Assembly (NCBI GenBank): GCA_964035545.1 | Contig: OZ037770.1 | Span: forward strand, 15,490,642-15,554,641 | Length of the DNA: 64,000 nucleotides | Source: Bugula neritina | Lineage: Eukaryota > Animalia > Bryozoa | Reading direction: 5' to 3' | The notes under the pieces: generated by a model | The model's database searches: none | Told to the model about the DNA's origin: nothing | The model's input: only the letters and a program-made list of their open reading frames with translations | Made by a program: the position numbers and the translations under genes | Shown: positions 2,426-21,918 of the stretch, piece after piece | Numbering within the stretch: the first letter of the stretch is position 1 | How the letters are laid out: each line of letters begins with the position of its first letter

Positions 2426-4709
2426 TTAATATGGAATACAGCAGCAATCAGATCTCAGTTTAAACCATCTCCATTGGAATCCCCCAGGCCATCTCCAAAT
2501 GAGAAATCTGACATATCTATACTGCGGAACACATCTACCATTCCACCACAAGTTACCAGAGAGCTGCAATACAAACACACACACTTAGTTGGAGATACAC
2601 ACATGCATACAGTAGTTTAATGTAGTATATTATATTATATTATTATATTACCATATTGCTATTTTGTTACTGTATTACTATTATATTATAATCCTATATT
2701 ACTATTCATTTACTTATGCTACTACTTACTGATCGGCCTGAACATTGCGTTTGGTGACACCAGCAGTGATGGAAGAACTGGTAAAAGTAGAAAGGTCTGA
2801 AGTGGACGATGTGCCACCAGTGTCCTGCATGGAAGATAGCTTTTGGGTACCAGAAGAAACAGGACTTCTGGCATGATGTTTCCCATTTTCCGCTGCTAAT
2901 TCTAAATAATTAACAGAGACTTACTGGTTAGCCTATGTCTGGCATACCCATTCTAGCTGAGTCTTATTGAAACAACAAAATTAATGTGAATTTAAAATGA
3001 TTAAATTTTGAAATGCAGTTTTTAGAAGCTCGTTTTTGAAAAATAATAAAAAATGAACAGCACCAATGACTTTCCTTATAATGTTGTACATATTGTATAC
3101 AATGAGTAGGTGTGTGAAAACAGGCATTATTCAATATGCTAGCAGGAAATAGCTCTACGCGGTAAAAACTTACAGGTAATAGTTAATCTATACTTTCTTT
3201 GCAAATATTATTATATGTGATTAATTCTATTTGTCCATATTTGAAAATATTTCTGAGAATAAAAAAACATTTAATATTTTTCTCACAGTGATGCCTGGTT
3301 CGATCTAAATTCTCTGGCCATGTTTGTCATTCCACGTTCAAGAGCTCCGTGTTCATCCTCACTATTACCCAAATCTGTCTCATTTGTGAATTTTGCTCTG
3401 GCTGCACGTTGCATAGCAGCTTCGTTGCTGTTGCGGGAACTAAAGGCATCAAGAATAAAGTAAGTATTACATTCAATCTAAGCATTTGTACAATACGCTA
3501 TTCTATCTACACCAGTCAAAGGTGATCAGATGTTCCTGTAACTGTATGTAGTTATACTACAACATCTACCTTTGTAAAAAGGGGCGTGGTCTATTAGTAT
3601 GTATTTTGTATTCATAGTGAGCACAACTCTCTAGCTACAATTCAGATATAAAGTCTGTTTACATACTTATGAGACTCAGACTGACTGCTAAACACAACAT
3701 AGTATATATTTACTATAAGTTGGGGAAATGAGCCATTAAATTATCACATTCTAAGATACCAGAGTTGTCTTCTCATGTGACTACTGAGTCAACACTATGA
3801 ACTCAACCACATGGTGAAGCTGACCTACTAAGTATATTAAAAGAATCACTCTCCTGCTAGTCTATATATTTACTCACTTAAAAGTTCCCCGAGGAAGTTT
3901 ACTCAGATCTGAGCAGAGCACTCCTTCTTCAGTGCAATCATCAGGACTTGTCTCCCCATGATCTCCTTGGGGCTGCTCTGTAGTGCGACGCTCTGTAGTG
4001 CGGCGCTCTGTAGTACGGCGCTCTGTAGTACGGGGCTCTGTAGTACGGCGTTGAGCGGAAACCAGGGCTAGCAACAGGGTCACAAGCTAAAACATGACAT
4101 ATGAAATAATTTATCAACAGGGTTTGTATGTAGAAACATAGTCACTGCCTGTATCATTGAGTGGAGTCTTGCATTCAAATCTGTTATATAATATAGTTAT
4201 ACCAAACTACAGGTTATAAGGTTTGTATACATACGTCGATATTTGATAAAATGTTATCAACAACAATTCACCAAAACTGCTGCAGATCTTCATGTTGAAC
4301 AAGTAGAATGTGTGACAATAACTGCTAGTCTGCATGCATATATCATTTATAGTATAAGCAACGTTAAAAAATAATGACATACTTTATTTTTCTTTTGTGT
4401 TAATTAGTTATATTAGTAGTAACTCTGCAATTACATAATATTTATTGTTTATCTATGTGATTTATTTTATACAGTATAAGAATTTGTGGTATAAATTTTT
4501 TACATTTAACAAAATTGAAATAAGAGAAATTTATTTTCAATAACTCTTTTCCATCTAACAATATGTTCGAAGACAATAACTTCAATTGATAAGTCAGTAT
4601 ATATAACCATGATTGCTATTTAGAATTAAACACAGATGTGTGCTTACAGCTATATTATTTGAATAACCATGTATAAAAGATAAACTATACTTACCACAAA
4701 ATACTTCAT
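2426..4709 (-). CDS. Secreted Spaetzle/neurotrophin-like cystine-knot precursor, copy A (228 aa, 5 exons)
   Basis: Exons 4709-4695, 4086-3878, 3439-3287, 2901-2730, 2563-2426; all GT-AG and phase-compatible (0,2,2,0). Signal peptide MKYFVLVTLLLALVSA, 5x (R/P)RTTE, pro-domain CTEEGVLC, C-terminal SCQKSCFFWYPKAIFHAGHWWHIVHFRPFYFYQFFHHCWCHQTQCSGRSLSGNLWWNGRCVPQYRYVRFLIWRWPGGFQWRWFKLRSDCCCIPY. Differences from copy B in exons 4-5 are mostly synonymous. Confidence 0.85.
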
Positions 4710-4770
4710 ATTGTTGAAAGATGAGATGAGGCTCCAGTGAATGAGTGACAACTGAAGATAAAGTTCTCCC

Positions 4771-4777
4771 TTTTATA
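4771..4777 (-). promoter_or_regulatory. TATA box of copy A
   Basis: GGTATAAAAGGG on the minus strand, with Inr-like TCAGTT/TCACTC 24-31 nt downstream and the ATG at 4709. Conserved in copy B. Confidence 0.7.
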
Positions 4778-4920
4778 CCGAACCACCTGTTGGCACCTGC
4801 CAAATATTTATTGCGAAATACCATATACCATAGAATTTATTACCTGCTGCATCCAATAAGATACTTGTATACTGATATAGTTGGGTGTAACTAATTAGGT
4901 ATCTAATCGTGTGGGTATAG

Positions 4921-5330
4921 TGTGATAGATTTTAGTAGTGCAAGTATTATGGTATTAATCGAAAAGGTTTACTCTATATTGTTTTATGTATCTTGTGAGT
5001 TCGACACTGTCGGAGTGTAGCTATGGGCAGTAGTGGCACCATTAGTAGCCACCAATCAGGACAATGACATTAATTGATAGCAGGTGGAGCTAGCTACTCG
5101 TAGTTGCAGTGCGCTGAGTAGCTAGCCGGCAGAGCAGCTTGGGACTTCATTTAGAACAGTTGTGTATTAAAGCTCACTAATTATGTAATCGTTTTCTATT
5201 CATGCTAGCAGTAAATAACCTTCTTGTATTTGTGTAAATAATAAAGTATCTTATCGTAAACAACCTGTCGCAGTGGCTTTGATTAAGTAGACCCACAAAT
5301 AATAATAGTGAACTGGCAAAATTCACTACA
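4921..5330 (+). repeat. 5' LTR
   Basis: TGTGATAG...CACTACA; no difference from 12394-12803 found by eye. Contains AATAAA and an 11-bp inverted repeat at 5089-5126. Confidence 0.97.
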
Positions 5331-5331
5331 C

Positions 5332-5349
5332 TGGTGGCAGCAGTGGGAT
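5332..5349 (+). promoter_or_regulatory. Primer binding site (probably tRNA-Leu)
   Basis: TGGTGGCAGCAGTGGGAT, 1 nt after the LTR. Its complement ATCCCACTGCTGCCACCA resembles the 3' end of animal tRNA-Leu plus CCA. Confidence 0.8.
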
Positions 5350-5385
5350 CTCACTTAATACAAATGCCCCTAGCCAGGGAGTAAG

Positions 5386-6255
5386 ATGGCCGACGAAGTC
5401 GTCGACGCGCCCCGACAGGAGCCAGCAGCAATGGAGGAGGATCACATAGGCGGCCCAGCGCTGCCTATGGACAGGTACCACTTGCGGGCTCCCACCTTCT
5501 CTGGAGAAGAAGATGTGGAGCAATTCATCACTGAGTTCAGTGATGTGGCGGACATCTGCGGATGGCCGAACAGGGTTACTCTGATCCAGCTGCGGTTGTG
5601 TCTGACAGGGCCGGCTAAACCCTATGGGATAAGCCAGAATGTCGGTGACATATTTGAAGCAATACGAGCTAGGTTTGGATTAACCGCTCGAGATGCTCGC
5701 GTGCAACTGCAGAGTCTTAGGAGAAATCCTAAGACCAATCTGCGAGAGCACGCTACCGTAGTCGAACGACTGGCACAAGTTGCTTACAGCGACTTGCCTG
5801 CCGATGGTCGACAGAGCCTAGCACTGGATGCATTCCTCCAGTCTATTAACAACCTCGGTCTTAAACAGCACCTGCTGGTGGCCGAAGTTGAGACTATGGA
5901 GAGAGCTCTAAGGCTTGGGAATGCCTATTTCCAAGCCGACAGTGCAAGTCGACCTGGCGCGACAGTACAGCAAGTCGAGGCAGACGACGTGTCGACGTCG
6001 CCAACGAAGACAGCTGTACAGGTCGCAGCGGCAGCAGCAGACGAATCTAACTTAACCACGAGCTTGATTCGAGAACTGCTCGCCGAGATCAGGCAACTGC
6101 GCCAGCAGGCGACAGCCGAGAGACCCAAGAGGTCGTCGGTAGCTGTCGACGACAGGCGCGGCCCCGTATGCTGGGGCTGTGGTAGTGGTGGGCACTTCCT
6201 ACGAAGTTGCCCCCGCGGCAGTGGGAGGCGGTTAAACAGCGACGGCCCACGGTAA
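5386..6255 (+). CDS. gag: Gag
   Basis: Capsid-like PTFSGEEDVEQFITEF region and CCHC knuckle CWGCGSGGHFLRSC. Confidence 0.92.
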   Translation: MADEVVDAPRQEPAAMEEDHIGGPALPMDRYHLRAPTFSGEEDVEQFITEFSDVADICGWPNRVTLIQLRLCLTGPAKPYGISQNVGDIFEAIRARFGLTARDARVQLQSLRRNPKTNLREHATVVERLAQVAYSDLPADGRQSLALDAFLQSINNLGLKQHLLVAEVETMERALRLGNAYFQADSASRPGATVQQVEADDVSTSPTKTAVQVAAAAADESNLTTSLIRELLAEIRQLRQQATAERPKRSSVAVDDRRGPVCWGCGSGGHFLRSCPRGSGRRLNSDGPR

Positions 6256-6274
6256 CTTCCGCCTACCGTGGGCC
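6231..6274 (+). promoter_or_regulatory. -1 programmed ribosomal frameshift signal (gag to pol)
   Basis: G_TTA_AAC in the gag frame (6231-6237), 6-nt spacer, then perfect 11-bp hairpin GGCCCACGGTA/TACCGTGGGCC (6244-6274). pol lies in the -1 frame. Confidence 0.8.
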
Positions 6275-9200
6275 CCAGTTTAACCCCCCAAGGCAAAGGC
6301 TACGGCCCCCACCCCATCGGGTGAGGAGGCCGCCTTCGCCAGAGTGGCAAGCCCCAAGGAGAGTGAGTCGGCCGCAAGGCCCACCAATACCTCCGGCTTG
6401 GGCACTCAAAAACCGCTTTGAAGGTTTGCTTGATGAGGGAGTGAACGACGAATGGGAGCACAACAAGGATTTTCCTCGGTTGCCCACACGAGCATCAGTC
6501 CGAGAATTCACTCGGCCGCCCGTGTGTGAGCGAGACCGAGACGTACCCTGCCCGCCCATGCAACGTCGACGACCCCCTCGCAACCGAAAAGCACAGGTGC
6601 ATCCCCAATTCCATGCACATGAGGTGTCGCCTCAAGAGACAAACCGCTCAGTGAGCGCCCAGCCATATGGAAGCAGCTATTTCCTCCCCGGCAAAGTTGC
6701 TGGTAAAGCTGCCACATTCCTGTTGGATACTGGGTGTACCACAAATCTACTGAGTCGACGTCTCTTCGACACTCTCAGTGCCAAGGACAGGGCTAGCCTA
6801 GAACCATATGAGGGGGAACACGGCACGTTGGCGGACGGGTCGTGTATTCCTTTCTATGGGGTAATTCAGTTGACTGGTAGAGTCCGTGATCAGATGATCA
6901 GTGAGACCTTCATCGTCAGTCAACTCAAGGAGGATGCCATCTTGGGCATGCCATTTCTGAAGCGACACAGGTGCTACATCGACTTTAGCAAGTCGGCAGT
7001 AGTGATGGCGGGGCGTGAGCTGGCCTGTGTCGACCGATTTGGCCGACCCTTGGTGGGGGGAGTGCAGGTGGTACAGCGCTGTACTGTACCTGGGCGCTCC
7101 CGGGCTACAGTTCGCTGCAGAGTGAACGGTAGGGAGATCTCCGAGCTCGGAGTGGTGGAAGGTGCACTGGGGGGCGTCCAGCTCGCTAACAGTCTGAATA
7201 GACTGGATGAGCGGAGGGAGTTCCTGGTCCAGTGCGTAAACCCTTTCACGGAGCCGGTAGAATTACCGGCTGGGTCTCTAGTAGGGAAGTTCCACTCCGT
7301 GCAAGAGGAGGATGTAGGGCCCGCGCTGGAAACAGCGGACGGTGCCCGGGGAGTACCCACTAGAGACGGCAGGGGGCCGGTGCCTGAACACGTAGCAGAG
7401 TTGTACGAGGATGCCTGTGATGGCTGTGAGAGCAAGCGAGAACGCCTGGAGATGGCGCGGCTACTCTCTGAGTACAAGGACGTGTTCAGTTGCGGCGACC
7501 ATGACATGGGTCTGACTGAGACGGTTCGTCATGAGATACCCCTGGCGGCGGGGACGGTGCCGATTCGGCAGCCGACCCGCCGGTTAGGTCCTGAGAAGGA
7601 GAGAGAAGTGAGCCGTCAGGTGCAAGACCTTCTGAACCGGGACCTGATTGAGCCAGGCCATGGGGCCTGGAGTTCTCCAGTCGTCCTGGTTCGGAAAAAG
7701 GATGGTAGCTGGAGGTTTTTTGCGTTGACTATCGCAGGCTGAACAGCGTGACCATCCAGGACGCTTACCCTCTCCCGAGGATCGATGAGTCGCTCGATGC
7801 CTTAGCTGGTAGCAAGTTCTTCAGCACGTTGGACTTGTTAAGCGAGTATTGGCAGGTGCCCCTGAGTCCTGAAGCACAGGACAAGGCCGCGTTTATAATG
7901 CGGGATGGGCTCTGGAAATGGAAGGTGTTGCCATTCGGACTTACGTCCGCACCAGCCACCTTCCAGCGACTCATGGAGCAGGTCCTGAGTGGACTGCACT
8001 GGAAGACCTTGCTCATATATCTCGATGATGTCATCGTCATCTCCCCCGACTTCGACACACATGTCAGTCGACTCAGGGAGGTGTTCGACAGACTCCGAGC
8101 TGCTAACCTGAAGCTGAAGCCCTCGAAGTGTGCATTACTACAACGCGAGGTCAAGTACCTGGGCCATGTAGTTGGTCGAGACGGGGTCGCCACCGACCCC
8201 GAGAAGGTACGGGCCGTGAGGGACTGGGCCGTTCCTGTCGACCTCTCTGAATTGCGGGCGTTCCTGGGGCTGGTTGGGTACTATCGTCAGTACATACCAG
8301 ACTTCGCAGGAATTGCACAGCCGTTAAATCGGCTGACCGCGAAGGGGGTGCGATGGCAGTGGACGCAGGCTGAGCAAAAGGCATTTGACCACCTGAAGGA
8401 TCGCCTGGTGGAGGCACCCATCTTGGCGTATCCTGACCCTGCGAAGGAGTACATTTTGGATACTGATGCCAGTAACCATAATGTGGGGGCGGTGCTATCG
8501 CAGGTCCAAGATGGTCGCGAGGTGGTGGTGGCTTACTATAGCAAGGCCCTGTCGGCGCCTGAGAAGAACTACTGTACAACCAGGAGGGAACTCTTGGCAG
8601 TAGTCAAGGCGGTCAAACACTTTAGACCATATCTATATGGGCGCACATTCCGGCTTCGGACGGATCATGCGTCTCTGATATGGCTGTGTCGACGGGCAGA
8701 ACCATCAAGCCAAGTGGCGCGCTGGCTAGAGATCCTGGCAGAGTTTTCTTATCGGATCGAGCATCGACCCGGTAAGAAACACGGTAATGCAGATGGACTC
8801 AGCCGCCGCCAGGCAGATGGGTGTAAGCAATGCCAGAATATCGAGCGCAGGGACGGTGGACCCCCTCGCTCGGACGTCGAAGCGCAGTTGGGGAAAGCGG
8901 GTGTGTACAGCTGGGAAGAAGGGCAACTCCTGTCCGAATCACCCAACAAAGCTGTTAACAACCTTCACGCAAACCCCACGTTGCTTCGGAACGTCAGGGA
9001 GCTATGTCGGCTCCAGTCCACGCTACCAGGAGTGGTAGCTGACCTAGTCCGGGCCAAGAAGGAGGGACGGCGGCCGAGTGAGGCCGAACAGCGAGTGAAG
9101 AGTACTGAGTTTAAGTACTTCTGTGACCGCTGGGACTCCCTAAGGTTCAACAGCAATGGGCTGCTAACGATCACGTTGGCAGTCGGCACCAATCGCAGTG

Positions 9201-10714
9201 AACGAGAGAGGGTAGTCTGCCCGTCAGCTCTGCGGCGGGAGTTGATCTGGGACACCCATAAGCAAGCTCACGCAGGAGCTAGCCGGGTGATCAGGTGTCT
9301 TCAACTCCAGTGGTTTTGGCCCGGTATGACCCGGGATGTCCGACTCCGGGTGCGGAAGTGCGAGGTGTGCCAAGCTAGCAAGCATGGCCGCCCCACTGAG
9401 ACCGCAGGGAGGCGTCGCCTCCATGCCGGTCGTCCGTGGCAGGTGGTTGCTGTCGATCTGGTAGGCCCCATGCCCACTACAGCGAGAGGTAATAACTGGA
9501 TACTGGTATTAACTGACCATTTCATGCGGTGGTCTGATGCACTGGCTATTCCAGATGCGTCGGCCCCCTCGGTGGCCAGAGCTCTGGATCAACAGGTGTT
9601 CTGCTATTTCGGCTTGCCGGAGCAGATACACTCTGACCAGGGCGCCCAGTTTCAGTCGCAACTTATGAGCGATCTCTGTAGAATGTGGGGGGTAAACCAG
9701 AGTCGGACGACCCCGTATCACCCGCAAGAGAACGGGGTCGTGGAGCGGAACAACCGAATGCTAGGGGACTCTCTGAGAAGCCTGCTTATCGGTAGGAGCC
9801 AGGAAGAGTGGGACTTGGTGTTGCCGCAGATCATGCGAGCGTACCGTAGTACCCCTTACTCCAGTACACTGGAGACCCCTAATTTTCTCATGCTGGGGAG
9901 AGAAACAAGGGTTCCTGAGCACGTAACCTATCATGTTCCGAATCCAGAGAGCAATGTCCACGACTACGTGGACAAGCTCGTAAAACGCATGGGGACGGCT
10001 CACGAGGTGCTACGTGAGCAGCAGTGGCAGGTCAGGAGTGGTGACTCTGACGACCCACCTTTATACAAGGTGGGGGACTGGGTCTGGATGACCAGTCATC
10101 GCCGCAGGCGCGGACAGGCAGCCAAGTTGCAGCCGAAGTTCGTAGGTCCCTACTGCGTAATTGAGGTAATGCCAAATCATACATACAAAGTGGAACGGTC
10201 TGGACAAGTGTCGGTCCAGAACGAGGCACGGCTAAAACCTCACTGGGCAAGTCCTGAGGCGGCAGGTCAGGCACCTCCTCTCTTAGAGCCAGCTAGGCGC
10301 CTTTCTATGAGAGGGCGACCCATGGCATATCGAGAGATTGAGGAGATACTGCCAGACCAGGACGGGGCGGCTGATGCGCCAGCCGACCAGCCCCAACCTC
10401 CTCCACCCCAGGAAGAGGAGGTCGACACACCTGAAGACCTGTCGGAGCCGGCCCCACTACCTGTGGAGCCGGTCGACAGGCCCATCGTTCCAGATGAGAT
10501 GGAAATTCCTCAGGATACTGAGGGAGAGGCAGCTGGGGGAGGGTCACCCGTACTGGTGGACCCCCCCGTACTAGTGACACCACCTTTGGTGGAAGAGTCA
10601 CCAGTCGCAGCAAATTCCCCAGTACCGTTGGAACGTAGCCAACGTACCAGGGCGCCACCATCTTATTTGAGAGACTTCTTGTGCGACTTGGTCGACACGT
10701 ACCGTATCTTGTAG
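6231..10714 (+). pseudogene. pol: Pol (PR-RT-RNaseH-IN) interrupted by a +2 nt frameshift in RT
   Basis: Protease LLDTG, RT YLDD, RNaseH DTDAS...TDH, integrase H-H-C-C, DLVG...SDQG...E and GPY motif. A T6 run at 7716-7721 sits where WRFCVDYR needs T4 and splits pol into ORFs 6207-7742 and 7748-10714. Confidence 0.9.
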
Positions 10715-11293
10715 CGTGTCGACAAGTACAAAAGAAGTCTGGGGGGCGAGGTAATTGATAGCAGGCGACCCAGTGGCGGATTGAATAGGTCAGCCGGGGG
10801 TCAGCAGAGCGTAGCCAAATCACAGCGTATAGGGTGTTACATAAGCACTCTAGCTGTGAGCGCTCTTTTCAATTACAGCTAGCAAACAGGCAGCACGTCT
10901 TTTGCAATAAATAATTTGGCTATCTACGAGCCCTAAGAAAGCAGCAGCATCATTATGTCTAATGCAGCAACTGTTTTGGGGGGTAAGTCTACTAGAAATT
11001 CTATAATAATTAATTAGAATTTATTCTGGTAGCGACAGCAGTCTCACTTTGTCATAATGATAAAGTTGAAACTCCTGACAGCGAATGATATTGATAATTA
11101 GAGTGGGACAGTCAACTCAGCTGATTACACGATCAGTGAGTGACAGTGAGACTCGATTATTTAATATTGTTTGGAACGGGAGTCCCACGCATAGAGTGTA
11201 ATTAAATTTAAATACTCTATTGCAGGTGAGACTGAGCCTGTATCCGACGAGATACAGGCATTACTTGACACGCCTACGACTAACTGGGACAGC

Positions 11294-12151
11294 ATGTCAG
11301 AAGCAGGGGTAGACATGCTGTCCGACATACATTTAGCAACATTTACGGACTCCCCGACACACACTGCGATGCAAATTGATACCAACGACTTGACTGATGA
11401 CTTGACTGTAGCCAAGGACACTACTCTAGCACTACCAAGAGCCTTACTGGGACGGACTAACTGGACGACTCGACGGACTCGAACATTGATAGAAGCAATA
11501 GTAGGGACGGACGACAATAGACAATGCACTGAATGTAGAAGAATACTATCGACTACTAGGAGACTGAGAATACACGTTCCACAACACTTTACTGTGACTT
11601 TCTGTCCCTGCGGAGTTCACCACTTCTGCAGGGACACGATACTGAGACACCAACGAACTAGAGACTGTTACGTAGGGCACTTGTATGAAGTCGACGCAGA
11701 CTCTTACACGGAGTTCCGGGACCTAATACTACCCCACGTGACTGACCCGGACCGACGGCAGACTCTCCTGGACCACTTCCCCGCTACCCGACCTACAGTA
11801 GAGAGTGACTCTGATGCAGACCCCCAACCCTCCGAAACAACGACTACCTACCCTCCAGACGTAACCACCCAACCTCTACGCGTCGTAGTAACCCGTGCTG
11901 GACGCGCTGTGACGAAGGACTCACAACCCCCAACGACGACAATCTCCTATGTACCCCGACACACCCATAAGAAGAAGAGGGGTGCTAGCAACACACCCCG
12001 AGATGACAGCGACCCTGACCAATCCCTACTAGCCGACATTAGGAAAGTACAACGGCGTATGGCTCGCCTCAGTAAGGAACAGAAGCGAGCAACCACCGAG
12101 CTGGCTAAGTTGCAGACCCGACTAGAGAAACGGCTGGCAAAGAAGTGCTAG
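11294..12151 (+). CDS. Retrotransposon ORF3: putative zinc-finger/coiled-coil nuclear protein (not Env)
   Basis: 285-aa ORF between pol and the PPT. C-x2-C-x12-H-x3-H (CTECRRILSTTRRLRIHVPQH), a second C/H cluster (CPCGVHHFCRDTILRHQRTRDC), basic HKKKRG and a C-terminal heptad helix. No signal peptide or TM segment. Confidence 0.7.
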   Translation: MSEAGVDMLSDIHLATFTDSPTHTAMQIDTNDLTDDLTVAKDTTLALPRALLGRTNWTTRRTRTLIEAIVGTDDNRQCTECRRILSTTRRLRIHVPQHFTVTFCPCGVHHFCRDTILRHQRTRDCYVGHLYEVDADSYTEFRDLILPHVTDPDRRQTLLDHFPATRPTVESDSDADPQPSETTTTYPPDVTTQPLRVVVTRAGRAVTKDSQPPTTTISYVPRHTHKKKRGASNTPRDDSDPDQSLLADIRKVQRRMARLSKEQKRATTELAKLQTRLEKRLAKKC

Positions 12152-12381
12152 AGGTGCGGCCACCTACACATGTACCCCCCCCCTCCCGGCTAGTCAAGCA
12201 GTGTAAATAAGTGTTATGGACTACGGCGTGAAGACTCATTTATTATACTTATGTTATCTACTCTGTATATATATTTTCTCTTGTTCAATTGTACCCTAGT
12301 TTTGTAAAGCACTATGTTACCTTCATTATTATTCGTGTGTTACTGTCATGTAAATATTAAGTCTAGAGAGTACTTTTCGAT

Positions 12382-12393
12382 AGGTGAGGAGAG
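12382..12393 (+). promoter_or_regulatory. Polypurine tract
   Basis: AGGTGAGGAGAG directly abutting the 3' LTR. Confidence 0.85.
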
Positions 12394-12803
12394 TGTGATA
12401 GATTTTAGTAGTGCAAGTATTATGGTATTAATCGAAAAGGTTTACTCTATATTGTTTTATGTATCTTGTGAGTTCGACACTGTCGGAGTGTAGCTATGGG
12501 CAGTAGTGGCACCATTAGTAGCCACCAATCAGGACAATGACATTAATTGATAGCAGGTGGAGCTAGCTACTCGTAGTTGCAGTGCGCTGAGTAGCTAGCC
12601 GGCAGAGCAGCTTGGGACTTCATTTAGAACAGTTGTGTATTAAAGCTCACTAATTATGTAATCGTTTTCTATTCATGCTAGCAGTAAATAACCTTCTTGT
12701 ATTTGTGTAAATAATAAAGTATCTTATCGTAAACAACCTGTCGCAGTGGCTTTGATTAAGTAGACCCACAAATAATAATAGTGAACTGGCAAAATTCACT
12801 ACA
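12394..12803 (+). repeat. 3' LTR
   Basis: 410-bp direct repeat of 4921-5330, followed by TSD ATAG. Confidence 0.97.
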
Positions 12804-15800
12804 ATAGCTTCAGTAGATACAATCTTCACAGTGGACCAATCACTGAAGGTTATTGTACTCTTATATATCTATATTTTGATTTGTTGGCAGTCTGCATTAG
12901 ATATAAACGACATTCAATAGTAAATTCAGTAAAATAAATATTTAAAGTGTTATGCACATAATTCAAAGGAATAATATAATTCAAAAGAAACTTTTTCTCA
13001 AGCAGTAAATTTGATTGACAAGTCAAGCTAAACATACAGTGAATTCTGAGCTGTCATTTGCAGCAGTTTCTATAAGTTTTTCAGACGAGATTTTAACTGT
13101 TATGTAACCTACTGTCAAGGTTATGTAACGTCAATTGTCTATAGGCAGCTCTTCCAATAATGTCTCACAACTGTCTTCATACCATATTAGTGTTTCTGAT
13201 TTATACAATGAAATTCTTTTCTGTTGCAGTTTGTTGATAATTTTTATTTATATTAACAACTATCTATCATGTTTTAAATGTTTTATTAATCGAACATATG
13301 TCCAACTATTTTTATTAATTTTAGTATACTTTACAAAAGCGGATGAAAACTGTTTTCACAGTCAATTAGTTGATTTGAAGCACAATTTCTCAAAAAGCAG
13401 GTTACACTGTTACTTTTAATCCTAATTAATTTACCCTGTTGCTACAACATAGGGAAGTGTGTTAACTTTTGTGAAAGCATAAATTAATTCAATAATATAG
13501 ATTTAAAAATAAAATCGAGTTTATATTTCCTCTTAGACATTGTGTAATACTTTATTTACTTTAAAACTAAAGGTCAAAATGTATAAATAACGCACTTTGT
13601 CAGTCTGCCATTCTATTATAATACACAAGAGAAATTGATGCTTGGTAATTAATGATGAAAGAGTGTTGCCAATAGTATAATAATACAACATGCTAAAATA
13701 TGGTATTAGAATTTAACAAAATTAGAATGCAATAATATGTAATATAATACACTATTAGGCAATGATGTAATATAACACAATGATATAACTAAACATAATT
13801 AATATGATAAGTGGTTTGAAAGTAAAATATTATTGTCAAATAAGTACATTATATGTACTTTTATCACTGCATAGAGAGAGATGGTGTTATTTATATACTG
13901 AGTCTAGTCGTATTGGATTTTACATACTAAATATAATTCTGTTTACCTGACAATCCATTACTAAACAAACATATAATAATATGACTGTAAGACTGCGCCA
14001 TACTGTGTTCCTCAGCTTGCTGATAATTGAAGCAAATTAAAACTCTTAACATTTTTAATCTGTCGCTATAGCTTACTAGCTTCTTACAATGTATATACAA
14101 AACTCAAACTTCAATTCTGTTATCTTATAGTCGCTCTAAATTATACCTTCTGTATTGACTGTATTTTACAAAAACAATAGCAAATAGTAAATGGCATTAC
14201 GCTGTTTTCAAAGTTGAGCACATTTGAGACAATAATATTTCTAAAAGCATCTGGTTGGATTGGTTTTTTTAACCTTAACTAATTTGCCTTGTGGTTTCAA
14301 CATAAGGAATTGCTAATATTTCCACAAAGGTAAATTAATTCAATAATGTCAGATTAAAAATAAAATTTAGTTCCTATTTCCTTTAAGACATTATTTATTC
14401 CGTCTACTTTGAAATTGAAAGGTGAATATATAATACTTTGTCAGCTTGCAGTTCTGTAATATTATGCATAGGATTATAGCGTTAAGCCTTCCTAATTATA
14501 GTATATCAAAACACTTCCTGGATCAAACTAATACCACCTTTCAAGGAAATAACAGATTATAGTAGATTTTACAATCAATTGTTCTGCTCTTTATAACTTA
14601 TATGTCTAAGTTTTTACAGAATGTAAACAAAAATTCTCAATAACGCTGTTTACCACTATTGTTGAAATTTGCAACTGAAAATATAATTAAAGCATAATAT
14701 AATGCAAATATAATACAATATATTATAAAATCATACAATGTATAATATAGCACAATATGTCATTTAATAATTTTTTATATAATATAATAACAAACACAGT
14801 GTTATTTTACGAATATTTTTAGTTGTCCAAACTATCACTTAATTCAAATATTTAATATGTTATTAATCATGAGGTTGGGATATTGAATGCGCTTGATTAT
14901 TAATTATGTCAGAATTACACCTGCAGATGGCTACACAATTATTGAAACTTGCTGCTGTTTCATTAGTTGATACAATATAAAGCGGTTCTTCTGATATTTA
15001 CATTGACCAATTTAGAATAATTACATCACATTATTCAACATAACTTTATTTATTTTCAAAAGTGTGCAGGAACTCTTTATTTACAAAGTAGTATTTATAT
15101 TAATATATACAGTATATTATTATAGCTAAGGTAGGGCAGCATCACATGTGTTGCTGAGAATTTTAACTTACTGAACCTAATTAAAAACATAGAAATAGTT
15201 AAAACAGCTAATCTGTTTTATTTTTTATTTTTACATAAATTCTTCCCTTTTAAAACAATATTATGATAAAATAGTTTTCTTGATCCATTGAAGCTCTCTG
15301 TAATGAAGCTTGCAGCTGTGTGATGGAATTATATAGCTTCATAAAGATGAAACAAACTTGTAATTAGTGATAAAATTTACATAAAATATATAATTTTAAA
15401 AATCATGCAAGAAGTGTGTTTAAATTATTTATTTATTTGTTTATTAAGTATTTCTTAAAAGCATAACCCATACTAAGTGAAGTATTGGATCAATAAACGA
15501 CCTTGAAATCATCGTAATCTCATCAATATAACTTACAAAGTTAATGGTTGACTAATGAATCGAATCCAGGTAATGGTAACCCTCTCTTAACTGCTATTCA
15601 ACTCTCAGCCAATCATATGCAACAAATGATTTGATTGGCTGACTTTTTGTAATTACTATAATAACATAAACAGACAATCTTAGATTACTATGCTTTGAAA
15701 AAAGAGACAGAGAGATGAGTCGTTTAACTTAGTGAGTTCTGATTGGGTAAAAACCTGACACTTTCTAGCTCAGCCTTAAAGTCATAATTATTATATGTTT

Positions 15801-16361
15801 GTTTAGTAATGGAGCGTGAAATCATCACGTACAGAATGTCTTCTTTTTTACTGGAGAATGAATTACGAAATCCTAAATACCTGCATCGCATGAGAACTGC
15901 AGCTAATGCTTTGTACAAAGCTGGCACTATATACTTTTGCACCAAACCAAAGGTTTGCGAAATCTTTAAAAATCCAGGTTACATTTGAGTAAAGCAGAGA
16001 GAATTGAAAGCTGGTTTAAGTTGTGGAATGATTCACCATAAGCTGTTGCATTGCATTGTATGTAGCAGCAATATATATGGGAATTATAGCCTCCACATAT
16101 ATGTTATCCCATATAATATATTAAATTTATAGTTCTGTGATCTGCCTATGTTAAGAGAGAACATTCTAGTAATATATTATGGTTATGAAACTGACATTAT
16201 ATATAGGAGAATATATCAGTTACTTCCAGTATATATATACTAAAAGAAAACTGGACTCTGTATATGAATAACACTCACTCTCAAACCACTTCCCATTGAG
16301 TATAAAACAGTTTACTCAATCTTAAAGTCATGTTCACCCTAATGTGCCAACATAATGTATA

Positions 16362-18184
16362 CAGGGATGTAGTGGTACCCATACGGTCCCATACGCCGTA
16401 TGGCCTAGAAGAAAATAGGCTGTTCTTGGCCATACGCCCGTATGGGCATATATTTTTTGAAAGTGTTACTGATTAGTGCACAGGATAGTTAAGGCATCCT
16501 CATTGAGAACATCATAAATTTCGCTCACAATCTAGTTTAAGTTCTTGTTATGTTAATGCTATGTGGGTGGCATGCGTGTTGCCTACTTGTGATTGTTTAG
16601 CCTGAGATTACACTATGAATAATAAGCAGCTATCAACATTCCATCTTCTCATCTCTACGTATTCACTGAAGCGCGAAGTGCTGCGCATTAGTGATTACTA
16701 AGGAAAAAATATTTCATTTTCAGTGTATAAATCACTAATTTGTAGAAAATCTATGAAGGCTATTGAAAAGATAAAAAAGTTTGCTATGCATAAATTTCTC
16801 AGGTTTTCGACAGTGTTTGTTTTATTCGAATACTATGCTTTCCTGCTGAGATATTTGGCAGGGTTTGAAAAATAAACTTTTCAGGTAAAATTGGCCAAAA
16901 TAGTAGATTTTTGTCTATAACCTTGCAAAAAAAATATTGAAAATTCGAAAAATCAGGTGCTCTGAGGAACAGGAAGGTCTAAAACATAGTTTTTAAATTT
17001 TAATTCTAGCACAATTAAGTATGGTTTTATTTGGCTGGACTGAATTATTATAATATACCAATAATGTGGCCTCAGCAAGGCAGTGTCAGCTAGAAAGTTG
17101 CCATTATTTATCTTGTGTGGACTTGGATTTTGTCAATAAGCAATGAAATTTGGAAAAAAACCAACATGAAATCCAGAAATAAAATCAAAATGTCTTCAGG
17201 AAACAGTACCAGGTGTGTAGGAGAGGTTAACGAAAATTTATCACTGAGGTCTACAGGTACTATGTCCACATTTTGCTCAAAAACCTAGCGTTATTGCATG
17301 TTAATTATATCAATGCAATGAGGTTTTGCAAACTGTACACCACCATAAGTAACCGTTTATGTTTGATTGTACTAACTAACATCTGGCTTTATATTTAATC
17401 ATCTTCTAGGTTAACACATATTAAACCTGTCAACTTTTTTTATTTGGGGTATGTTTCCTTGATGTGTCTAGTGAAAGTTCAGGGGTTTTATTTTAAAACC
17501 AAGTTAACATACTCTTCTTGGGTGTGCTTTATTGTGCGTTAGAAGGTGTGGTGGTATCTCCTTATGGTTTAGACTAATACTCTAATAAACTCCAATTAGG
17601 TTTTTAACCAATTTCTGCTTGCCAATGAGTTACCAATTCAAATTGCTCTTTATAAATAACAAACGCACATTTTCTGATTTGCAATCTGCCTCTCTTCTGA
17701 TCTATTATTCTTTTTCTAGGCACGTCAGTCTATTAGTTATTAATAAAGTAATCAGGTTGCATTTGGAGAGCACTTGTTACCTGCCTCTATCCTTCCATCT
17801 TTTTGAGATCTTCAGTAATTTTTCTGTACAGTTTGGACTTGGTGCATGTCAGAACAAACCTAACTGCAGTTGAGTAAGACTACATTTAAAATTACAGCCA
17901 ACAAGTATGGGACAATACTGAATATTTATACAGTTTGCAGCAATGCCCAGTTGTCACGTAGCTGGTATGGTATGAAAATAATAGTGAGGTGCACATTTCA
18001 ACACAGATTTTTTTCAGAAGAATTAGAATTCACAATGGCTTTAAATTGCATAAATTTGCATCAGAAGCGCTCTGAGGGCTTCGGCGGCCGGGGCGCTGCC
18101 CCGGACCCCGCCGGGGGCCTGGGCGGCCCCCTGGACCCCCGGCCTGAGAGTATGGCCTAGAATATTTTTGCCACTACATCCCTG
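16362..18184. mobile_element. Non-autonomous hAT-type DNA transposon (1823 bp)
   Basis: Perfect 14-bp TIRs CAGGGATGTAGTGG/CCACTACATCCCTG, 8-bp TSD AATGTATA (16354-16361 and 18185-18192), subterminal CCATACG/CGTATGG motifs, GC-rich block at about 18075-18145, no transposase ORF. Confidence 0.9.
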
Positions 18185-19339
18185 AATGTATAGTTATGTT
18201 ATTGTGTTATATTGCATTATTATAACATTTTTATTAATTAATGTAAATTATTACATAATATATTAGTAAATTATAATTTTATCAATTTCTGTTATTATAT
18301 TCTAGTATAATATATTATTATTTTATTGGCAACACTCTTTCATTACAAATTCTTCATTAATTACCAGGTAAACTTCAGTTTTACAGTAAAATATGCATAA
18401 CATTATAAAATAGCATGTTGATAAATTACTATATATAATCAACCCTCAGTTTCAAAGTAGAATAAGTGTTACAGAATTTCTTAATGGGAATGAAAAGTAA
18501 ATTTGGTTTTTTAATCCATTTTATAATTAGTTTACTTTCATGCTGATGTGAGCACTTCCTTATTTAGGTTAAACTATTTAGGATTAAGTTTGACTATTCC
18601 ACCTGGTGCTTTTTGATACTATACCAATTCACATTTATACTTTATATTGTGCTGGGAAATTTTGTAGCGGTTTGCTTGTTTTGGTAGATTAATGTATAAA
18701 GTCATTAAATATAGTTTAAAATATGTTTAAAAATTAAATATTTAAAGTGAGATAGATGACTTTGAAAATATAAATTACCAACAAGCTACAGGAATAACCC
18801 TTCATATATACTTTTTATTATACAGATAAAAACATTGAGACAATAAGGAGAAGAACGTGCAATGAGAAATTATTGAGAAAAGCTGCCTTGATATGACACT
18901 ACGTAACAGTTAAAGTGTCGTCTGATAACTTATTAAGGCTGCTGAAAATGGCAGCTCAGAATTCACTGAACGTCTAGCTTTACTCATCAATAAACTTTAG
19001 TGTTTGAGGAAAAGCTCCTCTGAATTATATTATTTCTTTGAGTTATTTACATAATAATTTATATATTGATTCGTTCTATTTTTCTATAACATATCGTATC
19101 TATCTGAGGGAGGCTGCCAACAAATGAGAATATATAGATATATACGAGTATAATAACCTTCAGTGATTGGTCTACTGTGAAGATTGTATCTACTGAAGCT
19201 ATACACACCATTTGATGCCTAATTAGTTACACCCAACTATATTAGTATACAAGTATCTTATTGGATACAGCAGGTAATAAATTCTATGGTATATGGTATT
19301 TCGCAAAAAATATTTGGCAGGTGCCAACAGGTGGTTTGG

Positions 19340-19346
19340 TATAAAA
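19340..19346 (+). promoter_or_regulatory. TATA box of copy B
   Basis: TATAAAA at 19340, Inr-like TCACTC with A at 19371 (31 nt downstream), ATG at 19408. Confidence 0.7.
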
Positions 19347-19407
19347 GGGAGAACTTTATCTTCAGTTGTCACTCATTCACTGGAGCCTCATCTCATCCTC
19401 CAACAAT

Positions 19408-21918
19408 ATGAAGTATTTTGTGGTAAGTATAGTTTATCTTTTATACATGGTTATACAAATAGTATAGCTGTAAGCACACGTCTGTGTTTAATTCTACATA
19501 GCAATCATGGTTATTATATACTGACTTATTAATTGAAGTTATCGTCTTCGAACATATTGTTAGATGAAAGAGTTGGTGAAAATGAATTTCACTTATTTCA
19601 ATTTTGTTAATTGTAAAAATGTAAATCATAAATTCTTATACTGTATAAAATAAATCACATAGATAAACAAAAATATTATGTTGTAGAGTTGCTACTAATA
19701 ACTAAATAAAATAAATCAAATAAAGTATGTTATATTATTTTTTAAGGCTGCTACTAAATTATTATTATATGCCTGCACACTAAGTTATTGTCACGTATAT
19801 TATATTTGTTCAACATCACAATGTGCAGCAAGTTTAGTGAAATGTTGTTGATAACATTTAATCAAATATCAAAATGTATACAAACCTTACGCATAAACCT
19901 CTTATAGTTTGGTAACTATATATAATAGATTTGAATGCAAGACTCCACTCAATGATAAAGTTAGTGATTATGTTTCTACATGTAAACTATGTTGATAAAT
20001 TATTTTATATGTCATCTTTTAGCTTGTGACGCTGTTGCTAGCCCTGGTTTCTGCTCAACGCCGTACTATAGAGCGCCGTACTACAGAGCGCCGTACTACA
20101 GAGCGCCCCACTACAGAGCGCCGTACTACAGAGCGTCCCACTATAGAGCGCCGTACTACAGAGCGCCGTACTACAGAGCGCCCCACTACAGAGCGCCGTA
20201 CTACAGAGCGTCCCACTACAGAGCGCCGCACTACAGAGCAGCCCCAAGGAGATCATGGGGAGACAAGTCCTGATGATTGCACTGAAGAAGGAGTGCTCTG
20301 CTCAGATCTGAGTAAACTTCCTCGGGGAACTTTTAAGTGAGTAAATATATAGACTAGCAGGAGAGTGATTCTTTTATTATACTTAGTAGGTCAGCTTCAC
20401 CATGTAGTTGAGTTCATAGTGTTGACTCAGTAGTCACATGAGAAGACAACTATGGTATCTTAGAATGTGATAATTTAATGGCTCATTTCCCCAACTAGTA
20501 AATATATACTATGTTGTGTTTAGTAGTCAGTCTAGGTCTCATAAGTATGTAAACAGACTTTATATCTATATTGTAGCTAGAGAGTTGTGCTCACTATGAA
20601 TACAAAATACATACTAATAGGCCACGCCCCTTTTTACAAAGCTAGATGTTGTAGTCTAACTACATACAGTTACAGGAACATCTGATTACCTTTGACTTGT
20701 GTAGATAAAATAGCATTGTAGAAATGCTTAAATTGGCTGTAATAATTACTTTATTCTGGATGCATTTAGTTCCAGCACTGATGAAACTGCTATGCAACGT
20801 GCAGCCGAAAGAAAATTCACGAATCAGACAGATTTGGGTCAAAGAGAGGATGAATACAGAGCTCTTGAACGTGGAATGGCAAACATGGCCGGAGAATATA
20901 GATCAAACCAGGCATCACTGTGAGAAAAATATTAAATGTTTTTCTAGTCTCAGAAATATTTTCAAATATGGACAAATATAGAATTAATAATCACATAACA
21001 ACATTTGCAAAGAAAGTATAGCTTAACTATTACCTGTAAGTTTTTACCGTTTAGAGCTATTTCCTGTTAGCATATTGAATAATGCCTGTTTTCACACACC
21101 TACTCTTTGTATACAATATGTACAACATTACAAGGAAAGTCATTGGTGCTGTTCATTTTTTATTATTTTTCAAAAACCAGCTCCTACAAACTGCATTTCA
21201 AAATTTAATCATTTTAAATTAACATCAGTTTTGTTGTTTCAATGAGACTCAGCTAAAATGGATATGCCAGACATAGGCTAACCAGTAAGTCTCTGTTAAC
21301 TATTTAGAATTAGCAGCGGAAAATGGGAAACATCATGCCAGAAGTCCTGTTTCTTCTGGTACCCAAAAGCTATCTTCCATGTAGGACACTGGTGGCACAT
21401 CGTCCACTTCAGACCTTTCTACTTTTACCAGTTTTTCCATCACTGCTGGTGTCACCAAACACAATGTTCAGGCCGATCAGTAAGTAGTAGTATAAGTAAA
21501 TAAATAGTAATGTGATAGTAAGCAGTAAGTTATAGTGAGTAGTTAGTATTGATTAAGTAAACAGTGAATATAGTAAGTAGTAACTAGTAAGTAGTAAATG
21601 ATAAATATAGCGAATAGTAAGTAACAAGTTGTGCATGGATAGTAAGTAGTAGTATAAGTGTATAAATAGTAATATGGGATTATAATATAATAGTAATATA
21701 GTAATATAATATAATATACTACATTAAACTACTGTATGCATGTGTGTATCTCCAACTAAGTGTGTGTGTTTGTATTGCAGCTCTCTGGTAACTTGTGGTG
21801 GAATGGTAGATGTGTCCCACAATATAGATATGTTAGATTCCTCATCTGGAGATGGCCTTTGGGATTCCAATGGAGATGGTTTAAACTGAGATCTGATTGC
21901 TGCTGTATTCCATATTAA
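19408..21918 (+). CDS. Secreted Spaetzle/neurotrophin-like cystine-knot precursor, copy B (262 aa, 5 exons)
   Basis: Exons 19408-19422, 20023-20336, 20770-20919, 21308-21479, 21781-21918. Same architecture as copy A but with 12 R(R/P)T(T/I)E units. The knot domain differs from A at only 2 residues (A/V, G/L). Confidence 0.85.

What the first reader, a model, noticed from the sequence alone, without database searches (positions are those of the whole stretch)
2426..21918. Hidden head-to-head pair of secreted, extremely aromatic Spaetzle/neurotrophin-like cystine-knot genes
Seen: two 5-exon genes with TATA boxes and signal peptides, of which the ORF track shows only exon 2. Exons 4-5 differ by about 8 synonymous versus 2 replacement codons, consistent with purifying selection. 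Known: the pattern C..YPK..W.IV..YQ..C..C..C.(P/Q).Y..L..FK..S.C.C is the Spaetzle knot, while WNGRC..YVRFL..WRWFKL..DCCC recalls the neurotrophin WNSxC..YVRAL..WRFIRI..CVC. Unusual: by hand count the 102-aa domain has 11 Trp, 11 Phe, 6 Tyr, 7 His, 9 Cys, 12 K/R and only 2 acidic residues. Inference: either a lineage-specific Toll/Trk-type ligand, or a knot scaffold repurposed as a self-assembling structural, adhesive or antimicrobial protein held soluble by its pro-domain.
Basis: partly seen in the sequence, partly recalled or inferred. Interest (0 to 1): 0.85.

Follow-up and report, generated by a model that had tools for sequence, protein, structure and literature searches.

The report
Aromatic neurotrophin/Spätzle-like secreted gene pair
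Two mirror-image copies of an unannotated five-exon gene, probably in a bryozoan genome, encode a secreted precursor whose last 100 residues look like a very divergent, extremely tryptophan- and phenylalanine-rich relative of the nerve-growth-factor/Spätzle signalling proteins; the gene is real and under selection, but the family assignment is still below database thresholds.

Summary
Two inverted copies (A on the minus strand, 2426-4709; B on the plus strand, 19408-21918) share TATAAAA boxes, an MKYFV start exon, four GT-AG introns, frame-preserving exon indels and a TAA stop. The composition count is exact: W11, F11, Y6, H7, C9, K+R 12, D+E 2 in 100 residues. So is the substitution count for exons 4-5: 8 synonymous against 2 replacement codons, dN/dS 0.07, p=7e-5.

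Exon 5 alone (45 aa) matches only two Pfam families, NGF (E 0.002) and Spaetzle (E 0.007-0.02). Both matches lie at the C-terminal end of the profile and both are below the gathering score. Its six best solved-structure hits are NT-3, BDNF and NT-4, gapless, with three cysteines aligned. Exon 4 matches nothing.

It carries a mix of residues diagnostic for Spätzle (Pro after Cys I, Phe133) and for neurotrophins (Trp130). No relative turned up among 1.84 billion representative proteins.

The most likely reading is a proteolytically activated cystine-knot ligand. A coagulogen-like self-assembling, adhesive or antimicrobial role is not excluded. The contig is not human.

The parts
19340..19346 (+). 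Copy B TATA box (TATAAAA), 62 nt upstream of the ATG
   Evidence: conserved in copy A
19408..19422 (+). Copy B exon 1: ATG plus 4 codons (MKYFV), followed by a GTAAGT donor
20023..20336 (+). Copy B exon 2: rest of the signal peptide (LVTLLLALVSAQ), 12 copies of a 15-nt coding repeat (RRTTE/RPTTE), then an acidic tail with two Cys. Ends in phase 2.
20770..20919 (+). Copy B exon 3: charged pro-region with an N-x-T sequon, ending ...GEYRSNQAS. Possible activation cleavage after the Arg (inferred).
21314..21479 (+). Copy B exon 4: N-terminal half of the Cys-rich aromatic domain (5 Cys, 5 Trp). Has a NAGNAG acceptor.
21781..21918 (+). Copy B exon 5: C-terminal half of the domain (4 Cys, 6 Trp), WWNGRC...YVRFL...WRWFKLRSDCCC, ending in a TAA stop
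22248..22253 (+). Copy B AATAAA polyadenylation signal
4771..4777 (-). Copy A TATA box
4695..4709 (-). Copy A exon 1 (MKYFV)
3878..4086 (-). Copy A exon 2: signal peptide remainder, 5 copies of the 15-nt repeat, and the same acidic two-Cys tail
3287..3439 (-). Copy A exon 3: pro-region, ending ...REFRSNQAS (R-x-x-R before the Ser)
2730..2895 (-). Copy A exon 4: one replacement relative to B (Ala for Val)
2426..2563 (-). Copy A exon 5 with TAA stop: one replacement relative to B (Gly for Leu) and six synonymous changes
2224..2229 (-). Copy A AATAAA polyadenylation signal
4921..12803 (+). Context: young Ty3/gypsy-type LTR retrotransposon inserted 212 bp upstream of copy A's ATG. It has 410-nt identical LTRs and an ATAG target duplication, and it interrupts arm A of the palindrome.
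12804..13796 (.). Continuation of palindrome arm A beyond the retrotransposon. Pairs with 19202-18186 at only 67% identity.

Best explanation
Two divergently transcribed paralogues in an old inverted duplication, homogenised over the gene bodies, each encode a pre-pro-protein. Its parts are a 17-residue signal peptide, a highly charged and probably glycosylated pro-region (RRTTE repeats, an acidic two-Cys segment, and a fast-evolving segment ending in Arg-Ser), and a C-terminal domain of about 100 residues and 9 Cys. That domain is a very divergent member of the neurotrophin/Spätzle cystine-knot superfamily.

Shown:
- The gene structure.
- Purifying selection on the domain.
- Sub-threshold but specific NGF and Spaetzle similarity of the C-terminal hairpin, with Cys IV, V and VI in register.

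Inferred:
- The pro-region is removed by a trypsin- or furin-like endoprotease after the Arg 13 residues before the first Cys, as in Spätzle and proNGF.
- Three disulfides form the knot, and the odd ninth Cys allows a covalent dimer, as in Spätzle.
- The dimer acts as an extracellular ligand for an LRR-ectodomain receptor (Toll or Trk) or a p75-type receptor.
- The charged pro-region keeps the very hydrophobic, cationic mature domain soluble until cleavage.
For: - Gene model coherent in both copies.
- dN/dS 0.07 in exons 4-5, synonymous versus non-synonymous p=7e-5. Non-synonymous rate below the intron rate, p=0.005.
- Exon 5 alone gives NGF PF00243 (E 0.0018/0.0026, profile positions 70-106 of 112) and Spaetzle PF16077 (E 0.007/0.019, positions 59-94 of 96). 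These are the only two of 24,736 Pfam families reported for exon 5.
- The PDB top six are NT-3, BDNF and NT-4 (E 0.0095-0.57), gapless over 37 aa, with WN..C, YVR.L, WRW and C.C aligned.
- The 55+ residues upstream of that match fit the remaining 58-69 profile positions.
- Exon 5 folds on its own as a long beta-hairpin (pLDDT 70). Its Foldseek neighbours are almost all cystine-knot cytokines, although every one has E>1.
- Diagnostic sites listed in PMC2772990 are present: Trp130, aromatic 133, hydrophobic 135 (from the alignment), and Pro 9 residues after the first Cys.
- The signal/pro/C-terminal-knot architecture matches that described for Spz and neurotrophins (PMC2772990).
- Toll receptors exist in at least one bryozoan (PMC8609888).
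Against: - All family scores are below Pfam's gathering score, and they come from half a domain only.
- Exon 4 has no profile, PDB or protein-database match. On its own it is modelled as two helices at pLDDT 69.
- The PROSITE neurotrophin motif is not met: the Cys III-IV spacing is 15 rather than 12.
- In a protein with 11% Trp and 11% Phe, the 'diagnostic' Trp130 and Phe133 could be compositional.
- There is no evidence of transcription, no orthologue, and no receptor evidence.
- 28% W+F+Y with a net charge of +10 is unlike any characterised soluble ligand of this superfamily known to me.
Confidence: 0.45

Rival explanations
1. The knot scaffold has been repurposed. After the charged pro-region is cleaved off, the aromatic, cationic, His-rich domain self-assembles or binds a surface. 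It would then act as a clotting or wound-plug protein (as coagulogen does), as a cuticle, chitin or adhesive matrix component, or as a Trp/Arg-rich membrane-active antimicrobial, rather than as a receptor ligand.
For: - Extreme composition: 28 W+F+Y, 7 His, 12 K+R and only 2 acidic residues in 100.
- Aromatic residues lie on both faces of the predicted strands.
- The pro-region has the opposite character: 41 charged and 30 Ser/Thr residues out of 104, and one aromatic.
- Established precedent: coagulogen has an NGF-like cystine-knot fold and polymerises after proteolytic removal of a peptide (my knowledge of the crystal-structure literature, not retrieved here).
- No orthologue was detected, as would be expected of a fast-evolving lineage-specific effector.
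Against: - The argument rests on composition only. There are no tissue, proteomic or biochemical data.
- Strong purifying selection on nearly every residue (dN 0.012) fits a specific binding interface as well as it fits a material.
- The retained neurotrophin-type interface residues (WN..C, YVR.L, WRW) argue for a conventional dimer.
Confidence: 0.25
2. It is a cystine-knot cytokine of another family (an IL-17-type, Trunk/PTTH-type or PDGF/VEGF-type ligand), and the NGF/Spaetzle hits merely reflect the shared knot.
For: - Foldseek neighbours of the exon 5 hairpin are headed by IL-17A/F, VEGF-B and sclerostin, with NT-4 only at rank 31.
- IL-17 ligands with all six knot cysteines are widespread in invertebrates (PMC11087794).
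Against: - All Foldseek E-values exceed 1, and a two-strand hairpin cannot discriminate between families.
- No Pfam family other than NGF and Spaetzle appears for exon 5, even at E<=10.
- The sequence identities to NT-3 (WN..C, YVR.L, WRW.., C.C) are family-specific.
- The long cleavable pro-region is the neurotrophin/Spz architecture.
Confidence: 0.08
3. The genes are not expressed or are decaying: silent duplicates, a chance ORF arrangement, or an assembly artefact. The 'protein' would then not exist.
For: - No transcript evidence.
- No matching protein in 1.84 billion representatives, not even a fragment.
- A retrotransposon sits 143 bp upstream of copy A's TATA box.
- One antisense frame of exon 5 is also open and equally 'conserved'.
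Against: - Both copies keep all five exons open, with canonical splice sites and frame-preserving indels.
- Synonymous changes exceed replacements 8 to 3, against a neutral expectation of about 1 to 4.6.
- The arms differ by 5-9%, by an LTR insertion and by repeat copy number, so this is not a fold-back assembly artefact.
- The antisense frame is a 52-codon stretch between stops, with no start or splice context.
- The neighbouring fucosyltransferase ORF of the same contig is also not on record in the related look-up collection. So the blank probably reflects the source genome not being covered.
Confidence: 0.12

Closest known systems
Spätzle family (Pfam PF16077; Toll ligands and Drosophila neurotrophins DNT1/2)
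   Same: - Signal peptide, long pro-region and a C-terminal knot domain of about 100 aa ending the protein.
- Pro 9 residues after the first Cys.
- An aromatic residue at alignment site 133 and a hydrophobic one at 135.
- An odd number of Cys, with an extra Cys in the Cys V/VI cluster.
- An Arg just upstream of the domain as a candidate activation site.
- Exon 5 matches the profile's C-terminal third (E 0.007-0.02).
   Different: - Below the gathering score, and exon 4 is undetected.
- Has Trp at site 130, which PMC2772990 reports as absent from all Spz.
- The extra Cys lies between Cys V and VI, not before Cys V.
- 9 Cys rather than 7.
- 28% aromatic residues.
- As of PMC2772990 (2009), no Spz had been recovered from lophotrochozoans.
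Neurotrophins (Pfam PF00243: NGF, BDNF, NT-3, NT-4, and invertebrate NTs of Daphnia, Capitella, Lottia, Platynereis)
   Same: - Best Pfam and PDB matches.
- Gapless 37-residue alignment to NT-3 with WN..C, YVR.L and WRW, and Cys IV, V and VI at identical spacing.
- Trp130 present.
- Pro-protein architecture.
- Multi-exon knot, as in the Daphnia NT gene.
   Different: [quoted passage not shown]
- Cys II-III loop shorter and Cys III-IV loop 3 residues longer.
- Phe instead of Ile/Val at site 133.
- Three extra Cys.
- No dibasic furin site in copy B.
- Extreme aromatic and cationic composition.
Coagulogen (horseshoe-crab clotting protein with an NGF-like knot)
   Same: Possible working analogy: a cystine-knot protein that becomes self-associating once a peptide is proteolytically removed.
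   Different: No sequence match to the Pfam coagulin family was reported. The analogy is functional only and untested.
IL-17 family cystine-knot cytokines
   Same: The C-terminal beta-hairpin ending in C-x-C resembles IL-17A/F in the Foldseek ranking.
   Different: No Pfam IL17 hit. All Foldseek E-values exceed 1. IL-17s lack a long cleaved pro-region.

Membership tests
Neurotrophin (NGF) family, PF00243 | Score at or above Pfam's gathering score (27 bits) | tested here: inconclusive
   Exon 5 alone scores 18.3/18.9 bits (E 0.0026/0.0018); exon 4 scores nothing.
Neurotrophin (NGF) family, PF00243 | Cys IV, V and VI with neurotrophin spacing (C-x28-C-x-C) and the WN..C / YVR.L / WR[FW]I motifs | tested here: met
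   Gapless alignment of exon 5 residues 6-42 to NT-3 residues 74-110, with all three Cys aligned.
Neurotrophin (NGF) family, PF00243 | [quoted passage not shown] | tested here: not met
   Exon 4 ends Q-C-S-G-R-S and exon 5 begins L-S-G-N-L-W-W-N-G-R-C. The Cys-to-Cys distance is 15 rather than 12, and Gly replaces Ser.
Neurotrophin (NGF) family, PF00243 | Trp at alignment site 130; Ile/Val at site 133 (PMC2772990) | tested here: inconclusive
   Trp130 is present, but site 133 is Phe, the Spz state.
Neurotrophin (NGF) family, PF00243 | Cys I, II and III in the N-terminal half forming the knot with IV-VI | not testable with these tools
   Exon 4 has five Cys (positions 8, 12, 44, 46, 51), so candidates exist. 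Their pairing would need the joined fold or a disulfide map.
Spätzle family, PF16077 | Score at or above Pfam's gathering score (27 bits) | tested here: inconclusive
   Exon 5 alone scores 16.0/17.4 bits (E 0.019/0.007), profile positions 59-94 of 96; exon 4 scores nothing.
Spätzle family, PF16077 | Conserved Pro shortly after Cys I (site 13) and an aromatic residue at site 133 (PMC2772990) | tested here: met
   Y-P-K with the Pro 9 residues after Cys 8 of exon 4. The positional equivalence rests on my recollection of Drosophila Spz. Phe at site 133 follows from the alignment.
Spätzle family, PF16077 | No Trp at site 130 (PMC2772990: absent from all Spz) | tested here: not met
   Trp31 of exon 5 aligns with the neurotrophin Trp.
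Cystine-knot growth-factor fold (superfamily) | Four-stranded, two-hairpin fold tied by three disulfides (I-IV, II-V, III-VI) | tested here: inconclusive
   Exon 5 alone models as a long beta-hairpin (pLDDT 70), and its Foldseek neighbours are cystine-knot cytokines at E>1. Exon 4 alone models as two helices (pLDDT 69). The joined domain was not folded.
IL-17 family, PF06083 | Pfam match | tested here: not met
   Not among the families reported for any exon at E<=10.

The most novel reading that the evidence does not exclude
A neurotrophin/Spätzle-type cystine knot has been turned into a material or effector protein. A charged, repeat-bearing pro-region would chaperone a domain with 28% aromatic residues and a net charge of +10. 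On proteolytic release this domain would polymerise, coat chitin or surfaces, or attack membranes. This would be a second, independent 'coagulogen-like' exit of the knot from signalling, in a lophotrochozoan.
Probability: 0.2. Interest if true: 0.8.

Novelty: new variant of a known kind. Interest (0 to 1): 0.55.

Why it matters
If confirmed, this would be a lophotrochozoan (apparently bryozoan) member of the neurotrophin/Spätzle superfamily that combines residues considered diagnostic for the two paralogous families. That bears on when Spz and neurotrophins split, and on whether Spz-type ligands exist outside ecdysozoans.

Its composition (11% Trp, 11% Phe, 7% His, 9% Cys, almost no acidic residues) is far outside that of known soluble cystine-knot ligands. 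So it is either an unusual receptor interface or a case of a signalling fold recruited for a physical role.

The locus is also a compact example of an inverted gene pair in which the knot domain is strongly constrained while the adjacent pro-region changes at least 15 times faster at replacement sites.

Tried and rejected
1. phmmer of exon 5 against 1.84 billion representatives gave two 'hits' at E 1e-19 and 1e-15. Both are long translated tandem repeats matched in 13 and 27 weak stretches, so they are spurious.
2. A metagenome scan with exon 4 gave one locus, L001. It is a bacterial contig, and the match lies off-frame and antisense within a substrate-binding-protein gene, so it is spurious.
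3. Exon 4 against 5.8 billion clustered proteins (length band 30-96 aa): no candidate. Exon 4 against Pfam and PDB: only chance FYF..HHC matches to neuroligins.
4. Exact look-up of the neighbouring fucosyltransferase, to name the source: not on record.
5. Exon 4 folded alone gives a two-helix model at pLDDT 69. I regard this as a fragment artefact and did not send it to Foldseek.
6. Alternative reading frames. The ORF-track frame of exon 4 would stop three codons into exon 5. One antisense frame of exon 5 shares third positions and is equally 'conserved', but it is 52 codons between stops with no start or splice context.
7. Fold-back assembly artefact: rejected. The arms differ by 5-9%, by an LTR insertion and by repeat copy number.
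8. Positive selection on exon 3: dN/dS is 1.26, not different from 1. The rate exceeds that of the introns, but the neutral rate across the locus is heterogeneous (0.04-0.13), probably through gene conversion, so no claim is made.
9. Rfam found nothing in the window. The bacterial promoter/terminator scan is irrelevant here.


Full report
SOURCE AND SETTING

The window is AT-rich (about 33% G+C outside a G+C-rich insertion) and intron-rich. An intronless alpha-1,3-fucosyltransferase ORF at 6-1199 (Pfam GT10) has its best named relatives in the bryozoan Watersipora subatra (40-47% identity). Bugula neritina, annelids and molluscs score lower. I therefore take the contig to come from a bryozoan, or at least a lophotrochozoan. 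It is not human. The exact ORF is not on record in the gene-position collection, so the source genome is apparently not part of the protein collections searched. This weakens every 'no homologue' result below.

THE OBSERVATION

The region contains an inverted duplication. Both copies support the same five-exon model.

| Feature | Copy B (plus strand) | Copy A (minus strand) |
|---|---|---|
| Exon 1 | 19408-19422 | 4709-4695 |
| Exon 2 | 20023-20336 | 4086-3878 |
| Exon 3 | 20770-20919 | 3439-3287 |
| Exon 4 | 21314-21479 | 2895-2730 |
| Exon 5 | 21781-21918 | 2563-2426 |

- Each copy has TATAAAA 62 nt before the ATG.
- The donors are GTAAGT, GTGAGT, GTGAGA and GTAAGT. The acceptors are pyrimidine-rich and end in AG. 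All are identical between the copies.
- AATAAA lies 200-330 nt after the TAA stop.
- Exon 1 encodes MKYFV and exon 2 starts LVTLLLALVSAQ. Read in succession these form a classical signal peptide, with a likely cut after VSA or SAQ (my reading; no predictor was run).
- Exon length differences keep the frame. There is a 105-nt difference in a 15-nt coding minisatellite (5.1 versus 12.1 copies of RRTTE/RPTTE) and a 3-nt indel in exon 3. Intron indels are of arbitrary length.
- Only these two copies exist in the window.

So is '8 synonymous versus 2 replacement codons' for exons 4-5.

IS IT CODING, AND IN THIS FRAME?

Counted per exon and summed, exons 4-5 have 8 synonymous and 3 non-synonymous nucleotide differences over 53.5 and 246.5 sites. 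That gives dN/dS 0.07 and Fisher p=7e-5. The non-synonymous rate (0.012) is also below the intron rate (0.05, p=0.005).

Among the six frames of exon 5, only two show a single amino-acid difference and no stops: the modelled frame, and the antisense frame that shares its third positions. That antisense frame is a 52-codon stretch between stops without a start or splice context. The other open frame of exon 4, the one an ORF track shows, would terminate three codons into exon 5.

The arms differ by 5-9%, by an LTR insertion and by repeat copy numbers. This rules out a fold-back assembly artefact.

I conclude that these are real, constrained protein-coding genes. Transcription and the exact junctions remain unverified.

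WHAT THE PROTEIN LOOKS LIKE

After the signal peptide comes a pro-region. Its exon 2 part is very charged and Ser/Thr-rich: in copy B, 22 K+R, 19 D+E and 30 S+T out of 104, with one aromatic residue. It ends in an acidic segment with two Cys. Its exon 3 part carries a conserved N-x-T sequon and ends ...REFR/GEYR-SNQAS.

The last 100 residues (exons 4 and 5) are the opposite in character: 11 Trp, 11 Phe, 6 Tyr, 7 His, 9 Cys, 12 K+R and only 2 acidic residues.

FAMILY TESTS

No search, profile comparison or fold of the joined exons was made.

Exon 5:
- Exon 5 alone (45 aa) matches exactly two Pfam families at E<=10. These are NGF (E 0.0026 in B, 0.0018 in A; 18-19 bits against a gathering score of 27; profile positions 70-106 of 112) and Spaetzle (E 0.019 and 0.007; positions 59-94 of 96).
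- Against all PDB sequences its six best hits are NT-3, BDNF and NT-4 (E 0.0095-0.57). The alignment to NT-3 is gapless over 37 residues and puts WN..C, YVR.L, WRW and the terminal C-x-C in register.
- The match ends two or three residues before the stop codon. It leaves about 60 residues upstream for the remaining 58-69 profile positions, so the domain has the right size and position.
- Folded alone without an alignment, exon 5 gives a long beta-hairpin (pLDDT 70).
- Its Foldseek neighbours in the PDB are almost exclusively cystine-knot cytokines (IL-17A/F, VEGF-B, sclerostin, PlGF, NT-4). All have E>1, so this shows consistency only.

Exon 4:
- Exon 4 gives nothing in Pfam, PDB or the 5.8-billion-cluster search.
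- Alone it is modelled as two helices at pLDDT 69. I regard this as uninformative for half of a disulfide-tied domain.

Diagnostic sites:
- Wilson (PMC2772990) lists sites that separate Spz from neurotrophins.
- This protein has the Spz states at two of them. There is a Pro shortly after Cys I (Y-P-K, nine residues after the first Cys; the positional equivalence is from my memory of Drosophila Spz). There is also an aromatic residue at site 133.
- It has the neurotrophin state at the third: Trp130, reported as absent from all Spz.
- It also has the shared hydrophobic site 135 and a Gln seven residues before a candidate Cys II.
- The PROSITE neurotrophin motif quoted in that paper is not met. 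The Cys III-IV distance is 15 instead of 12, and several positions differ.

The safest statement is that this is a divergent member of the neurotrophin/Spz superfamily of uncertain subfamily. Two caveats apply. The assignment rests on half a domain, and Trp and Phe at 'diagnostic' sites may be compositional in so aromatic a protein.

RELATIVES

- phmmer of exon 5 against 1.84 billion representatives found only two spurious repeat proteins.
- The metagenome scan found only a bacterial false positive.
- With a 45-residue query in so large a library, only relatives above roughly 45-50% identity would be seen, and the source genome itself is absent.
- The family is therefore undetected, not shown to be absent. 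The literature searches made here turned up no bryozoan neurotrophin or Spz. Toll receptors are reported from Membranipora but were not found in a Bugula transcriptome (PMC8609888).

EVOLUTION OF THE PAIR

The gene cores, from about 290 bp upstream of the ATG to the 3' UTR, are 91-95% identical. The flanking arm sequence is far more diverged: 67% identical on the inner side (12804-13796 versus 19202-18186) and 80% on the outer side. Identity along the genes is mosaic, ranging from 74% to 100% per 100 nt. This suggests an old inverted duplication with gene conversion over the genes.

Exon 3 stands out. It is 16% diverged, with dN 0.18, dS 0.15 and 19 of 23 changes non-synonymous. Its non-synonymous rate is 15-fold that of the knot domain (p=9e-8) and 3.7-fold the intron rate (p=2e-5). 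Because the neutral rate is heterogeneous here, I do not claim positive selection. I claim only that the pro-region next to the putative cleavage site is free or driven to change while the knot is not.

MECHANISM

Best reading (confidence 0.45): a secreted pro-protein is activated by cleavage after the Arg 13 residues before the first Cys. In copy A this site is R-E-F-R, a minimal furin-type site. In copy B it is G-E-Y-R, which would need a trypsin- or clip-type protease as Spz does. Cleavage releases a knot domain of about 105 residues. Nine Cys allow three knot disulfides, one extra intrachain bond and one free Cys for a covalent dimer, as in Spz. The dimer would signal through a Toll-, Trk- or p75-type receptor. 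Everything after 'secreted pro-protein' is inference.

Main rival (0.25): the domain's composition means it is a material or effector. It could be clot-forming like coagulogen, chitin- or surface-binding, adhesive, or membrane-active, with the charged pro-region keeping it soluble.

Lesser rivals: another knot family such as IL-17 (0.08), or silent or decaying genes (0.12).

VERDICT

This is a new, compositionally extreme variant of a known superfamily, with its fold and function still to be shown. Interest 0.55.

Noticed in passing
window 4921-12803: Young Ty3/gypsy-type LTR retrotransposon with protease, RT, RNase H and integrase domains. Its 410-nt LTRs are identical, and the target duplication is ATAG. 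It also has an extra 285-aa ORF (11294-12151) without a Pfam match.
   Followed up: partly
window 1990-4920 + 12804-13796 versus 18186-22477: The palindrome is much older than the genes suggest. The flanks are only 67-80% identical, while the gene cores are 91-95% identical with a mosaic of near-identical tracts. This points to gene conversion confined to the transcribed region and proximal promoter.
   Followed up: partly
window 20770-20919 and 3287-3439: Exon 3 (pro-region next to the putative cleavage site) is 16% diverged, and 19 of its 23 changes are non-synonymous. That is faster than the flanking introns, and 15-fold faster at replacement sites than the knot domain.
   Followed up: partly
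window 3975-4050 and 20059-20239: A coding 15-nt minisatellite (RRTTE/RPTTE) has 5.1 copies in copy A and 12.1 in copy B. All three sense frames and the antisense frames are open across it, which produces misleading ORFs.
   Followed up: yes
window 21936-22204: A 136-nt tandem duplication in the 3' UTR of copy B, absent from copy A. Intron 4 also differs in length (301 versus 166 nt) through an AT-rich GTAA/ATAGTA-type repeat.
   Followed up: no
window 21308-21317 and 2892-2901: A NAGNAG tandem acceptor (TTAG|CAG|C) at exon 4 in both copies. Either site keeps the frame and would add or drop one Ser.
   Followed up: no
window ~22670-45350, minus strand: Three tandem amiloride-sensitive sodium channel (ASC/DEG-ENaC) paralogues at about 22.67-29.8, 31.0-37.95 and 38.7-45.35 kb. 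Their introns carry long minisatellites that create many spurious repeat ORFs.
   Followed up: partly
window 6-1199, plus strand: An intronless alpha-1,3-fucosyltransferase (GT10) gene. Its best named relatives are a large Watersipora subatra paralogue family (40-47% identity), which gives the taxonomic hint.
   Followed up: yes
window 46000-64000: Numerous coding-looking minisatellites (for example 57447-58520, 59891-60946 and 61264-61848) are open in several frames on both strands. There is also a 280-aa Ser/Pro-rich ORF at 61985-62827 (minus strand) without a Pfam match.
   Followed up: no
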